A DNA stretch of 64,000 nucleotides from positions 434,001 to 498,000 of the forward strand of contig NC_043026.1 in the NCBI RefSeq assembly GCF_006345805.1, given 5' to 3'. Source of the DNA: Octopus sinensis (Eukaryota). The notes beneath the pieces were generated by a model that was not told where the DNA came from, made no database searches, and saw only the letters and a program-made list of their open reading frames with translations. Numbering within the stretch: position 1 is the first letter of the stretch; every line of letters starts with the position of its first letter. A program made the translations under genes and the position numbers. Shown here one piece after another: positions 30,522 through 33,018 of the stretch.

Positions 30522-30574
30522 TTAGTTCGGTTTCATTCGAATGAATATGGCCATGGAATCAGCTGTTCCATATC
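30522..30574 (-). CDS. Gene 2, terminal coding exon
   Basis: tttcag|GA TAT GGA...AAC TAA; (G)YGTADSMAIFIRMKPN*. The phase-1 acceptor matches the previous donor, and the exon is duplicated at 60917-60969. Confidence 0.85.
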
Positions 30575-31355
30575 CTGAAAGTAACAACATCACCATCATT
30601 ATCATTGTCGTCATCATCACCTTCATCATCATCATCATCATCATCATCATCATCAACAACAACATCGTCGTCATCATCATCATCATCATCATCATCATCA
30701 TCATCATCATCATCATCATCATCATCATCACACGTATACACACATACAGACAGAAGCATACCCCCTCCTTACAACACACACACACATATCCTGAACCCAG
30801 TTAGCAACATGTACTAATATGACAGAGGGGGGAGAAAGGGAGAGGGAAAGACATTACATTTGTAGTATGAGGGACGAAGTACCATCCACCTTCCTCTCAG
30901 GTTCTCTTGCAGCGTGGACTTACATCTGAAAACACCCTAACCGCCTAACCCCTGGCCAAAACCTAAAGTTAAATTCCCTCTAGAACGTATGTCCACGCAC
31001 GTCAGTAGAGCCCGACCACCCCGAAGCAAAGAGGTCCTACTTCGCTTTTACCTCATCCTCCACAACATATAACTAGAAGAGAGAGAGAGAGAGGGAGGGA
31101 ACGAGACAGACAGACAGATAGATAGACAGAGAATAAAATGGCTGAGTGAACGGAAGAAGCATTAAAACGAGACAAACATTAAAACGCGTCTAATGTGAAA
31201 TAAATCGGCGTCGAATGAGAGACGCTGAACAGACGGCGCCAAAATGACCGTAGTTCCCTACGCCGCATACACAATAGACTCAGCTCAATCTAACTCACTG
31301 AAACTTCGAAACAGAAAGCCAAGATAATAAAATAGACAGACGACGAAATACTTAC

Positions 31356-31516
31356 CGTTATGCCATATGGTTTTCGACTTTGTGTTGGAGTATAAGATTG
31401 CAGGGAATAGCTTAATTTTTCCCAACCACATACATGAATTTTTCATTAATAGACAACCAGCCGGTATCTCCGTGACATGCGTATGAAAAGCTGACACATA
31501 GAATCGGCGGATCTTT
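31356..31516 (-). CDS. Gene 2, fourth coding exon (three 1-nt deletions relative to the gene 2/gene 3 consensus)
   Basis: ctacag|AAAGATC...CATAACG|gtaagt; 161 nt versus 164 in the consensus. Corrected read: KIRRFYVSAFHNACHGDTGWLSINEKFHVCGWEKLSYFPAILYSNTKSKTIWHN. Confidence 0.85.
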
Positions 31517-32084
31517 CTGTAGAGAGAAAAAAATATAAAAGGGCTGGTTTCAGATCTTTTTGCTGTTTAACCTCCGCAATGTGCATTACTTTATCTGGAA
31601 AGGCATTTATTAATGTCAACGAAGTACAAAACTCTAATCTTCTGCTAAGTAAAATTCCCTGACTTAAATATACATGTTGTAGCGCTCCAGCCATTTCGTG
31701 AAGGCCTCATGAGTAACAGTTTTATGATCTTTTTGCAGCTGTGATAAAATATCATATTGCTCTACCTTCGGTATTCGAATACTATTTTATCCACCTTGTT
31801 TCACAATTTATGTGCTTACTTGTGCATGTATGTATGTATGCATGTATGTATGTATGTATGTATGTATGTATGTATGTATGATGTATGTATGTATGTGTAT
31901 GTATGTGTATGTATGCATCTATGTATGTATGTATGTGTATGTATGTGTATGTATGTGTATGTATGTGTATGTATGTGTATGTATGTGTATGTATTTGTGG
32001 GGGTTTATGTTTGAATGTGTGCACGTTTGTTCCCCACTATCGCTTGACAACCGGTGTTGCTGTGTTTACGTTCCCGTAACTTGG

Positions 32085-32575
32085 ATGGATGGATGGATGG
32101 ATGGATAGATAGATAGGTAGACAGAAAGACAGACAGATAGGTAGATAGATAGATAGATAGATAGATAGATAGATAGATAGATAGATAGATAGATAGATAG
32201 ATAGACAAGTGGGTAGATAGACAGAGAGGTAGATAGCTACATAATATGTAGATAGACACATAGATAGACAGACAGACAGACAGACAGACAGACAGACAGA
32301 CAGACAGATAGATAGATAGATAGATAGATAGATAGAGAGAGAGATAGATAGATAGATAGATAGATAGATAGACAGACAGACAGACAGACAGATAGATAGA
32401 TGGATAGCTAGATAGATAGATAGATAGATAGATAGATAGATAGATAGATAGACAGACAGACAGACAGACAGACAGACAGACAGATAGATAGATAGATAGA
32501 TAGATAGATAGATAGAGAGAGAGATAGATAGATAGATAGATAGATAGAGATAGATAGATAGACAGACAGACAGCG
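32085..32575. repeat. (GATA)n/(GACA)n microsatellite; duplicate at 62540-62780
   Basis: Direct reading. Confidence 0.95.
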
Positions 32576-32854
32576 TTTATGCAAACATAATCTTTAAATA
32601 ATAATCTGTATATAAAAAATTATTCGTGCAAAGAATATAATGCAAAATTTATTTTCGATTTCGAAAATAAATTCAAAATAACTCGTGACGAATGCTCTGT
32701 ATGAGGAATTTCGGAGAGAAGGAAAAGAATTGAGAACATCCATCTTGGACTTAACTTTCATTTTTTCTTTTTCTTAAGCGGTTCTGAAAGGGATTAAATT
32801 TGAACCCGGAATCTAAAGCCAATTGAGTAATATGAAGTGATAATGATGACCTAC

Positions 32855-33018
32855 CCAACGCCCGTTATTGAGAAATGATTTTGGGGGCTCGTTGCCAGAT
32901 CGTCCCATGGGGAACTTTTCAGGTTTTTAGCAGAGAACCAGTTTTCAAGAGTTGTATTTCGTCCATTAAACACCATTGTTACTACGGCTGTTTCCTTTTT
33001 GTATAACACAAGTTTCAC
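32855..33018 (-). CDS. Gene 2, third coding exon
   Basis: tttcag|GTGAAA...GTTGG|gtaggt, 164 nt. VKLVLYKKETAVVTMVFNGRNTTLENWFSAKNLKSSPWDDLATSPQNHFSITGV. Confidence 0.9.

What the first reader, a model, noticed from the sequence alone, without database searches (positions are those of the whole stretch)
30522..33018. Strong excess of amino-acid-changing differences between genes 2 and 3
Seen (manual codon comparison of the last three exons, ~127 codons): 13 nonsynonymous versus 1 synonymous substitution. In exon 3 the first ~135 nt are identical, then six replacements cluster in the last ~30 nt (P/S, Q/H, H/Y, I/M, T/A, G/V). Exon 4 has H/P, T/A, K/R, L/S, L/I, H/Y plus one silent change; exon 5 has P/S. 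The DL-x7-FS-x2-G-x stretch is also among the most divergent segments versus gene 1. Inference: diversifying selection on a binding surface, as in recognition or toxin-like proteins. Gene conversion could also shape the identical stretch.
Basis: partly seen in the sequence, partly recalled or inferred. Interest (0 to 1): 0.75.

Follow-up and report, generated by a model that had tools for sequence, protein, structure and literature searches.

The report
Fast-diverging duplicated octopus secreted-protein genes
Two recently duplicated octopus genes for a secreted protein of unknown function differ almost only by amino-acid changes at the family's most variable positions, faster than the neighbouring introns change, which points to selection for diversity; the frameshifts in both copies are probably assembly errors.

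Summary
The count is correct. In the frame shared with intact relatives, gene 2 (exons 33018-32855, 31516-31356, 30574-30522, minus strand) and gene 3 (63225-63062, 61889-61728, 60969-60917) differ by 13 replacement and 1 silent substitution, six of them in the last 32 nt of exon 3.

On its own this is weak: dN/dS is 3.7, Fisher p=0.15.

Other tests give stronger support. Replacement divergence (4.6%) exceeds flanking non-coding divergence (2.0%, p=0.017). At the 44 codons that are hypervariable across the family it reaches 12.8% (p=2e-6). A second young paralog pair in the Octopus sinensis reference shows 8 replacement and 0 silent differences.

The reference allele of gene 2 (LOC118768577) has identical substitution states and an intact frame. 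The window is biased towards missing single bases, so the frame breaks are probably assembly errors.

The proteins belong to an octopod-expanded family: signal peptide, PAN/apple-like domain, and a roughly 140-residue domain with no Pfam model and no PDB match.

Diversifying selection is the best reading (about 0.55). A binding surface or toxin role is untested. This is a new example of a known phenomenon.

The parts
32855..33018 (-). Gene 2 exon 3 (164 nt, phase 0 start). The first 132 nt are identical to gene 3.
   Evidence: AG acceptor and GT donor; 100% identical to exon 3 of O. sinensis LOC118768577.
32855..32886 (-). Hypervariable patch HVR1 at the 3' end of exon 3. It holds six substitutions against gene 3, all replacements.
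   Evidence: Scan statistic p=0.02. These are high-entropy columns in the family alignment.
31356..31516 (-). Gene 2 exon 4, 161 nt as assembled (164 nt in intact relatives). It has three single-base frame breaks, next to 31483, 31437 and 31408. Against gene 3 it has 7 substitutions: 6 replacements and 1 silent.
   Evidence: The reference allele has 0 substitutions and 3 extra bases, and reads in a single frame.
30522..30574 (-). Gene 2 exon 5 coding part including the TAA stop. One replacement (P/S) against gene 3.
48612..48941 (-). Gene 2 exon 1 (signal peptide plus PAN/apple-like domain). One single-base frame break near 48685.
   Evidence: The only difference from reference exon 1 is one missing base.
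45062..45240 (-). Gene 2 exon 2. The frame is intact, but it differs from the reference allele at 14 of 179 nt (10 replacements, 4 silent).
63062..63225 (-). Gene 3 exon 3.
61728..61889 (-). Gene 3 exon 4, 162 nt as assembled. Two single-base frame breaks, next to 61846 and 61758. As assembled, the reading hits a stop at the end of the exon.
60917..60969 (-). Gene 3 exon 5 coding part including the stop.
   Evidence: It is identical to exon 5 of the reference LOC118768577.
1088..1251 (-). Gene 1 exon 3, an older paralog about 75% identical to genes 2 and 3. Its exons 1 and 2 lie at about 11287-10958 and 3441-3262. Exons 4 and 5 are off the window or in the N gap.
26295..33518 (.). Copy A of the young duplicated block. 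Copy B is 54973-63742. Unique non-coding sequence is 2.0% diverged.
54973..63742 (.). Copy B of the duplicated block, containing gene 3 exons 3-5. Homology to copy A ends at 63742 inside intron 2, 258 nt before the window end. Whether gene 3 has its own exons 1 and 2 is unknown.

Best explanation
Genes 2 and 3 are young tandem duplicates, with introns about 2% diverged. They belong to an octopod-expanded family of about 295-residue secreted proteins. Each protein has a signal peptide, a PAN/apple-like domain, and a roughly 140-residue all-beta domain that has no Pfam model and no solved relative.

Since the duplication, the copies have accumulated amino-acid replacements almost only at loop positions that are hypervariable across the whole family. 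The framework stayed unchanged. The rate at those positions is several times that of neighbouring non-coding DNA. The most likely cause is positive (diversifying) selection on a ligand- or partner-contacting surface after duplication.

The five single-base frame breaks in exon 4, and one in exon 1 of gene 2, are most likely deletion-type consensus errors in this assembly, not real pseudogenisation.

Shown: the counts, the rate excess, the position bias, and the intact reference allele. Inferred: that selection is the cause, and that the variable loops form a binding surface.
For: 1. Counts: 13 replacement and 1 silent difference, dN 0.047 and dS 0.013.
2. Non-coding divergence in the same block is 35/1761 = 2.0%. 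dN exceeds it (OR 2.4, p=0.017; Poisson p=0.005).
3. At the 44 codons with family entropy of 2 bits or more (defined without this gene), the replacement rate is 12/94 sites = 12.8% against 2.0% (OR 7.2, p=1.7e-6). At the 82 conserved codons it is 1/190. The position bias gives Mann-Whitney p=4e-6.
4. Replicate: the inverted LOC118768485-type pair in the O. sinensis reference has 8 exon substitutions, all replacements, against 0.8-1.1% in 2.8 kb of non-coding DNA. Pooled over both pairs, Cochran-Mantel-Haenszel OR is 2.4-2.7, p=7e-4 to 1e-4. Pooled 21:1 gives binomial p=0.033.
5. Against the O. bimaculoides ortholog, the exon 3 framework has omega 0.08-0.14 but HVR1 has omega 1.1-2.2.
6. The states are real. 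The reference assembly carries the gene 2 state at all 12 exon 3-4 replacement sites. Gene 3 matches the O. bimaculoides ortholog P0016 at 8 of the 13 sites.
7. The frame breaks are probably artefacts. The reference allele is intact and has 0 substitutions in exons 1, 3 and 4. The window lacks the base in 33 of 44 one-base indels against the reference (p=0.0013). Its indel-to-substitution ratio is 0.38, against 0.055 between the O. vulgaris and O. sinensis assemblies.
Against: - The classical test on this pair alone is not significant (p=0.15). There are only 14 substitutions, and the pair was flagged because it looked extreme.
- Introns may be kept similar by gene conversion between the copies, which would make them an underestimate of the neutral distance. 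The reference haplotype is indeed a gene 2 / gene 3 mosaic.
- A third pair (O. bimaculoides P0016/P0021) has 9 replacement and 1 silent difference in exon 4, but its introns are about 18% diverged, so it is not a replicate.
- The five frame breaks cluster in exon 4 far more than the window-wide indel rate predicts (5 in 328 nt against about 0.6 expected). This is unexplained.
- Gene 3 has no independent confirmation, and its exons 1 and 2 are not in the window.
- No expression data, ligand or fold relative is available.
Confidence: 0.55

Rival explanations
1. Templated diversification. Ectopic gene conversion or unequal recombination among the many paralogs pastes short patches into the exons. 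Exons are the only parts that stay alignable between distant copies. This would raise exon divergence above intron divergence without selection on new point mutations.
For: - The reference haplotype switches between gene 2 and gene 3 states within intron 4 and is gene 3-like from exon 5 onward.
- Exon 2 of gene 2 differs from the reference at 14 of 179 nt, while exons 1, 3 and 4 have no substitutions.
- In O. bimaculoides P0016/P0021, dS is 0.42 in the exon 3 framework but 0.03 in exon 4.
- Six changes sit within 32 nt.
Against: - No donor was found in 7 loci and 51 proteins.
- The one paralog sharing gene 3's S-H-N-Y motif (LOC118768485) uses different codons at three of the four positions.
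- The exon 4 changes are scattered singletons separated by identical sequence.
- A diverged donor should also import silent differences, yet only 1 of 14 changes is silent.
Confidence: 0.2
2. Chance plus relaxed constraint. One or both copies are decaying pseudogenes, the frame breaks are real, and 13:1 is a sampling fluctuation at sites that tolerate change.
For: - 13:1 is not significantly different from the 3.6:1 site ratio (p=0.15).
- As assembled, both copies are frame-broken. Gene 2 reads about 26 codons out of frame, and gene 3 stops at the end of exon 4.
- The homology of gene 3 to gene 2 ends inside intron 2, so it may be a partial duplicate.
Against: - Neutral decay cannot push the replacement rate above the neutral rate, yet it is 2.3-fold above overall and 6-fold above at variable codons.
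- Conserved codons show 1 change in 190 sites, which means purifying selection is still acting.
- The reference allele of gene 2 is intact.
- The window has an assembly-wide bias towards missing single bases.
- The pattern recurs in a second, intact pair.
Confidence: 0.15
3. Assembly or polishing artefact. Reads from other paralogs mis-mapped onto conserved exons during consensus polishing. This would create both the substitutions and the single-base deletions in exon 4 and at the end of exon 3.
For: - Substitutions and one-base deletions are both concentrated in exon 4 of both copies (5 indels in 328 nt against 5 in 1761 nt of non-coding DNA).
- The window shows a general excess of one-base deletions relative to the reference.
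Against: - The gene 2 substitution states are reproduced exactly by an independent assembly.
- Gene 3 states match the O. bimaculoides ortholog at 8 sites, which random errors would not do.
- The same replacement-only pattern is present inside the reference assembly itself.
Confidence: 0.1

Closest known systems
Accelerated evolution of duplicated venom-gland genes (crotaline PLA2, serine proteases, C-type lectin-like proteins; Conus toxins)
   Same: Both are tandemly duplicated secreted-protein genes in which protein-coding differences between young copies are mostly replacements. Ka/Ks is above 1 in the specialised copies (habu genome paper PMC6062510). My recollection of its reference Nakashima et al. 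1995 is that introns are more conserved than the coding regions.
   Different: There is no evidence that this family is a venom component or a toxin. There is no expression data and no homology to any toxin family. The signal rests on two pairs with 14 and 8 substitutions, not on a family-wide analysis.
Diversified invertebrate recognition families (FREPs of snails, Sp185/333 of sea urchins, amphioxus and echinoderm lectin-domain expansions)
   Same: Both are lineage-specific tandem expansions of secreted proteins with a conserved framework and hypervariable loops. The C-terminal domain co-occurs elsewhere with lectin and adhesion modules: F5/8 type C, SUEL lectin, WSC, Sushi, EGF, ZP.
   Different: The domain is not a fibrinogen-related domain. 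Foldseek gives only weak hits (probability 0.3-0.6, rmsd about 10 A), and there are none once the domain is modelled alone. Somatic diversification, immune induction and sugar binding have not been shown.
Octopus sinensis LOC118768577 (P0015) and its O. bimaculoides ortholog LOC128251093 (P0016)
   Same: Gene 2 is the same gene as LOC118768577. Exons 1, 3 and 4 have no substitutions, and the five-exon structure is the same: 331/179/164/164/53 nt.
   Different: The window copy lacks four single bases in the coding sequence. It carries a different exon 2 (14 of 179 nt), has P instead of S at the penultimate codon, and has an extra 8 kb in intron 2.

Membership tests
Gene pair under positive selection (dN/dS > 1) | dN significantly greater than dS for the pair | tested here: inconclusive
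   Ratio 3.7, but one-sided Fisher p=0.15 with 13 replacement and 1 silent difference. Pooled with the second pair, 21:1 gives p=0.033.
Gene pair under positive selection (dN/dS > 1) | Replacement rate exceeds an independent neutral proxy (flanking introns) | tested here: met
   4.6% against 2.0% (p=0.017). At hypervariable codons, 12.8% against 2.0% (p=1.7e-6). Over two pairs, CMH p is 7e-4 or lower. Caveat: gene conversion may keep the introns similar.
Gene pair under positive selection (dN/dS > 1) | Site or branch-site likelihood models on a recombination-screened paralog and ortholog alignment | not testable with these tools
   PAML and HyPhy are not available. Only 5 subfamily sequences have DNA in hand.
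PAN/apple domain proteins | Sequence match to Pfam PAN_1 or PAN_3 above the gathering score | tested here: not met
   Best scores are 12-17 bits against cut-offs of about 21.
PAN/apple domain proteins | PAN/apple fold in the N-terminal ~85 residues | tested here: met
   The AlphaFold model of P0015 was searched with Foldseek. Hits were the HGF N domain, the Toxoplasma microneme-protein apple domains (PDB 4a5v) and leech antiplatelet protein, with probability 0.95-1.0 and rmsd about 3 A over about 84 residues. This part of the model has only moderate confidence (pLDDT 60-78).
Fibrinogen-related domain proteins (FReD/FREP) | Fibrinogen C-terminal fold or Pfam match in the C-terminal domain | tested here: not met
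   No Pfam hit. The full-length model gives only weak Foldseek hits (probability 0.3-0.6, TM 0.3-0.4, rmsd about 10 A). The domain-only model gives none (best E=0.5).
Processed or decayed pseudogene | Frame disruptions that are real and not present in other assemblies' alleles | tested here: inconclusive
   As assembled there are 4 frame breaks in gene 2 and 2 in gene 3. The gene 2 breaks are absent from the reference allele, and the window has a deletion bias. Reads are needed to settle this.
Known toxin or venom families | Homology to a described toxin family, or venom-gland expression | not tested
   No Pfam, PDB or NCBIfam match of any kind for the C-terminal domain. No expression data were available.

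The most novel reading that the evidence does not exclude
The octopod PAN-plus-unknown-domain family (about 20 or more genes per genome, in tandem arrays) is a previously undescribed hypervariable recognition-protein repertoire. It is built on an ancient extracellular domain that has no Pfam model. That domain is also present in amphioxus, echinoderms, other molluscs and one myxobacterium. Young copies are driven apart by selection at a few surface loops, as in immune, gamete-recognition or prey-targeting systems.
Probability: 0.35. Interest if true: 0.6.

Novelty: new member of a known kind. Interest (0 to 1): 0.5.

Why it matters
If the signal holds, this is a compact and testable case of adaptive divergence right after tandem duplication in a cephalopod. 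The variable loops are already pinpointed, and an uncharacterised family of about 50 annotated members could be screened for expression and binding partners.

It also flags a widespread extracellular domain with no curated model: 1120 representative proteins at E<=0.001.

For the scan itself, it shows that this window's assembly has a bias towards missing single bases. That bias breaks the reading frames of genes that are intact in the reference, so 'pseudogene' calls in this window should be treated with caution.

Tried and rejected
1. Translating the open 125-residue ORF of gene 2 as assembled. It has no Pfam hit and only 3 homologs. Comparison with those homologs showed that the middle of exon 4 is read out of frame.
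2. Searching for a reference counterpart of gene 3 with its pieces joined by X. No match closer than 57% was found. The 10-kb flank of L003 stops 2 kb short of it.
3. Fetching the loci of P0004 and P0031. The first gene range is too long and the second is not on record.
4. Micro-conversion from the LOC118768485 paralog as the source of gene 3's S-H-N-Y motif. Rejected because the codons differ.
5. Using O. bimaculoides P0016/P0021 as a third replicate. Rejected because the introns there are about 18% diverged, so the exon is not faster than the intron.
6. Gene conversion as the cause of the identical 132 nt. Not needed: clean runs of 94-163 nt also occur in intron 4 at the same overall divergence.
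7. Fold assignment of the C-terminal domain. Fibrinogen-like hits from the full model were weak. Galectin-like hits from the domain model were not significant. My remembered guesses of the GON domain and the apextrin C-terminal (ApeC) domain got no Pfam support.
8. O. vulgaris as the source of the window. Rejected because the window is 0.67% from O. sinensis, while O. vulgaris is 1.6-2.1% from it.
9. Literature searches for the family under 'PAN domain' or 'apple domain' plus octopus. Nothing was found.
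Full report
**What the window is**

The sequence is AT-rich and full of microsatellites and SINE-like repeats. Its genes match only octopod proteins. Against the Octopus sinensis reference (GCA_006345805.1, CM016888.1:676566-707154, locus L003) it is collinear over about 17 kb, with 0.67% substitutions. O. vulgaris differs from O. sinensis by 1.6-2.1% at a neighbouring locus. The window is therefore O. sinensis or something very close to it, from a different assembly or haplotype.

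**Gene map (all on the minus strand)**

- Gene 2: exon 1 at 48941-48612, exon 2 at 45240-45062, exon 3 at 33018-32855, exon 4 at 31516-31356, exon 5 at 30574-30522, ending in TAA.
- Gene 3: exon 3 at 63225-63062, exon 4 at 61889-61728, exon 5 at 60969-60917. Its upstream exons are not in the window.
- Gene 1: exons at about 11287-10958, 3441-3262 and 1251-1088. The rest is off the window or in the N gap at 916-1015.

The finding's coordinates run exactly from the first base of gene 2 exon 3 to the last base of its stop codon. Genes 2 and 3 lie in a young duplicated block, 26295-33518 against 54973-63742. Gene 1 is an older paralog, about 75% identical in exon 3.

**Checking the observation**

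- Exon 3: the first 132 nt are identical. Six substitutions then fall in the last 32 nt, all replacements (P/S, Q/H, H/Y, I/M, T/A, G/V).
- Exon 4: six replacements and one silent change.
- Exon 5: one replacement (P/S).
- Totals: Nd=13, Sd=1, N=283.8, S=79.2, dN=0.047, dS=0.013, ratio 3.7.

Intact relatives in O. bimaculoides, O. vulgaris and O. sinensis read exon 4 in one frame of 164 nt. Against them, gene 2 has three frame breaks. Their net effect is minus 3, so an ORF stays open, but about 26 codons are read out of frame and the conserved C..D.GWL motif is lost. Gene 3 has two frame breaks and reaches a stop at the end of exon 4. Gene 2 has one more break in exon 1.

**Is it more than chance?**

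- The 13:1 split against the 3.6:1 ratio of sites gives one-sided Fisher p=0.15. On its own this is not evidence for dN>dS.
- Six substitutions within 32 nt give a scan-statistic p of 0.02.
- The neighbouring non-coding DNA is a much larger neutral yardstick than 79 silent sites. In 1761 aligned unique non-coding positions of the same block there are 35 substitutions (2.0%) and 5 indel events. dS (1.3%) agrees with this. dN (4.6%) exceeds it (OR 2.4, p=0.017). If every replacement site were neutral, 5.6 changes would be expected against 13 seen (Poisson p=0.005).
- The 13 replaced positions sit at columns that are hypervariable across 25 other family members: mean entropy 2.84 against 1.32 bits, p=4e-6.
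- At the 44 codons with 2 bits or more, the replacement rate is 12 per 94 sites (12.8%), six times the non-coding rate (p=1.7e-6). At the other 82 codons it is 1 per 190. Relaxed constraint can raise a rate to the neutral level, but not above it.

**Are the differences real?**

The reference allele of gene 2 is LOC118768577 (protein P0015). It is identical to the window at every substitution site of exons 1, 3 and 4, and it carries the gene 2 state at every gene 2 / gene 3 diagnostic site from intron 2 down to 31258. The O. bimaculoides ortholog is LOC128251093 (P0016, locus L004). It shares the gene 3 residue at 8 of the 13 sites and the gene 2 residue at 4. Changes therefore occurred on both lineages, about 8 on gene 2 and about 4 on gene 3, and the gene 3 states are not random errors.

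**Are the frame breaks real?**

Probably not.

- The reference allele differs from the window in exons 1 and 4 only by having the four extra bases, with no substitutions. Four frameshifts and no substitution in about 660 nt is not what a real null allele looks like.
- Over 16.8 kb the window differs from the reference by 44 one-base indels and lacks the base in 33 of them (binomial p=0.0013). The ratio of one-base indels to substitutions is 0.38, against 0.055 between the O. vulgaris and O. sinensis assemblies.
- This indicates a consensus error rate of about 0.2% towards missing single bases in the window. That rate predicts roughly 2 frame breaks in the coding sequence of gene 2 and about 1 in the three exons of gene 3. 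The observed numbers are 4 and 2.

One thing stays unexplained. Five of the six breaks fall in exon 4 of the two copies (328 nt, about 0.6 expected).

**A replicate**

Locus L006 of the reference (CM016888.1:609470-668618) holds an inverted pair of LOC118768485-type genes.

- Across 3.2 kb the pair has 32 non-coding substitutions in 2817 positions. Removing one microsatellite leaves 23.
- It has 8 exon substitutions in 375 positions, all replacements. Seven of them lie in two patches of exon 4 (M/I, V/I, D/V, E/Q, S/G and K/R, N/T).
- Pooling both pairs, the replacement rate exceeds the non-coding rate with Mantel-Haenszel OR 2.4-2.7 (p=7e-4 to 1e-4). The 21:1 split gives p=0.033.

A third pair, O. 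bimaculoides P0016/P0021, has 9:0 in HVR1 and 9:1 in exon 4. Its introns are about 18% diverged, so I do not count it as a replicate. Its very uneven dS (0.42 in the exon 3 framework, 0.03 in exon 4) points instead to exon-scale conversion.

Between species the gene as a whole is under moderate purifying selection (omega 0.47). The exon 3 framework is strongly constrained (0.08-0.14), and HVR1 is at or above 1 (1.1-2.2, not significant).

**Exchange between copies**

The reference haplotype follows gene 2 through exon 4. It alternates between gene 2 and gene 3 states within intron 4, and is gene 3-like from exon 5 into the 3' flank. Exon 2 of gene 2 differs from the reference at 14 of 179 nt, although the other exons are identical.

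Recombination or conversion is therefore active in this array. This matters in two ways. It may keep introns more alike than their age warrants, which would inflate the contrast. It could also import variant patches from other paralogs.

I found no donor. The one paralog with gene 3's S-H-N-Y motif uses different codons. The exon 4 changes are scattered single sites. Silent changes were not co-imported. If conversion homogenises everything except the variable loops, that too implies selection for keeping the copies different.

**What the proteins are**

About 50 annotated relatives were retrieved, all from octopods: O. sinensis, O. bimaculoides, O. vulgaris and Argonauta hians. Most are about 295 residues long and lie in tandem arrays.

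- Residues 1-26 look like a signal peptide (inference from the sequence).
- Residues 30-110 give only sub-threshold Pfam PAN hits. They fold as a PAN/apple domain in an AlphaFold model (pLDDT 60-78 there), with Foldseek probability about 1 to the HGF N domain and parasite apple domains.
- The C-terminal domain is predicted with confidence (pLDDT 81-95 in its core). It is all-beta, has two conserved cysteines, and has invariant W..F, S.W.D and GW motifs.
- This domain has no Pfam, NCBIfam or PDB sequence match and no significant structural neighbour.
- A profile search finds 1120 representative proteins at E<=0.001. They include multidomain extracellular proteins of amphioxus, sea stars and crinoids carrying Sushi, EGF, F5/8 type C, SUEL lectin, WSC, ZP or ADAMTS modules, and one Myxococcota protein.

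This context suggests an extracellular binding module, but no function has been shown. The variable positions fall between predicted strands. I could not examine coordinates to see whether they share a face.

**Verdict**

Its own statistic is weak, but independent yardsticks and a replicate make diversifying selection after duplication the best explanation (about 0.55). The alternatives are paralog-templated conversion (0.2), chance with relaxed constraint (0.15) and artefact (0.1).

The phenomenon is well known from venom, immune and reproductive gene families (for example PMC6062510). This is a new member of a known kind, in an uncharacterised family. Read-level validation and a recombination-aware family analysis are the decisive missing steps.

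Noticed in passing
window 30300-58935 compared with L003: The window lacks the base in 33 of 44 one-base indels against the O. sinensis reference. Its one-base indel to substitution ratio is 0.38, against 0.055 between the O. vulgaris and O. sinensis assemblies. This is probably a deletion-biased consensus error that will break other reading frames in this assembly.
   Followed up: yes
window 31356-31516 and 61728-61889: Five of the six coding frame breaks fall in exon 4 of the two copies. That is about 8-fold above the window-wide one-base indel rate. No explanation was found.
   Followed up: partly
window 45062-45240: Exon 2 of gene 2 differs from the reference allele at 14 of 179 nt (10 replacements, 4 silent), while exons 1, 3 and 4 have no substitutions. 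The surrounding ~1 kb is also only 93-95% identical. This looks like a segment swapped in from another paralog.
   Followed up: partly
window 34834-42864: About 8 kb inside intron 2 of gene 2 is absent from the reference locus L003. It is an insertion/deletion difference, and its content was not examined.
   Followed up: no
window 20608-25145: A 190-bp satellite with 24 copies, 96% matching, and 44-48% GC in an otherwise AT-rich window.
   Followed up: no
window 29187-29748: Two arrays of a 29-nt tandem repeat, about 9 copies each. The unit ends in a polypyrimidine-AG acceptor-like motif. They lie just downstream of gene 2.
   Followed up: no
window 4034-10553: A 2.6-kb unit repeated about 2.5 times in tandem (92-95% identity) inside intron 1 of gene 1. 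Related copies are present in the O. vulgaris, O. bimaculoides and O. sinensis loci.
   Followed up: no
L006 14718-19676 and 27551-39594 (O. sinensis reference): A head-to-head inverted duplication of LOC118768485-type exons 2-5 at 95-98.7% identity. Copy A carries a 9.3-kb insertion after exon 4. The annotated gene model runs across the inverted copy.
   Followed up: partly
O. sinensis LOC118768579 (P0004), gene range 101 kb: The RefSeq model joins exons 1-2 of the window's gene 1 to a distant exon 3-5 set and skips gene 1's own exon 3. This is either mis-annotation in a repetitive array or real long-range use of alternative exon 3-5 cassettes.
   Followed up: no
family-wide (alignment A4, profile positions about 150-290): The C-terminal domain has no Pfam, NCBIfam or PDB counterpart, yet it matches 1120 representative proteins. 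These are found in amphioxus, echinoderms, molluscs and a Myxococcota bacterium, often repeated 2-4 times per protein.
   Followed up: partly
window 63743-64000: Homology between the gene 3 and gene 2 blocks stops at 63742 inside intron 2, and a dispersed repeat follows. Gene 3 may be a partial duplicate of exons 3-5 only, or may carry an insertion there.
   Followed up: no
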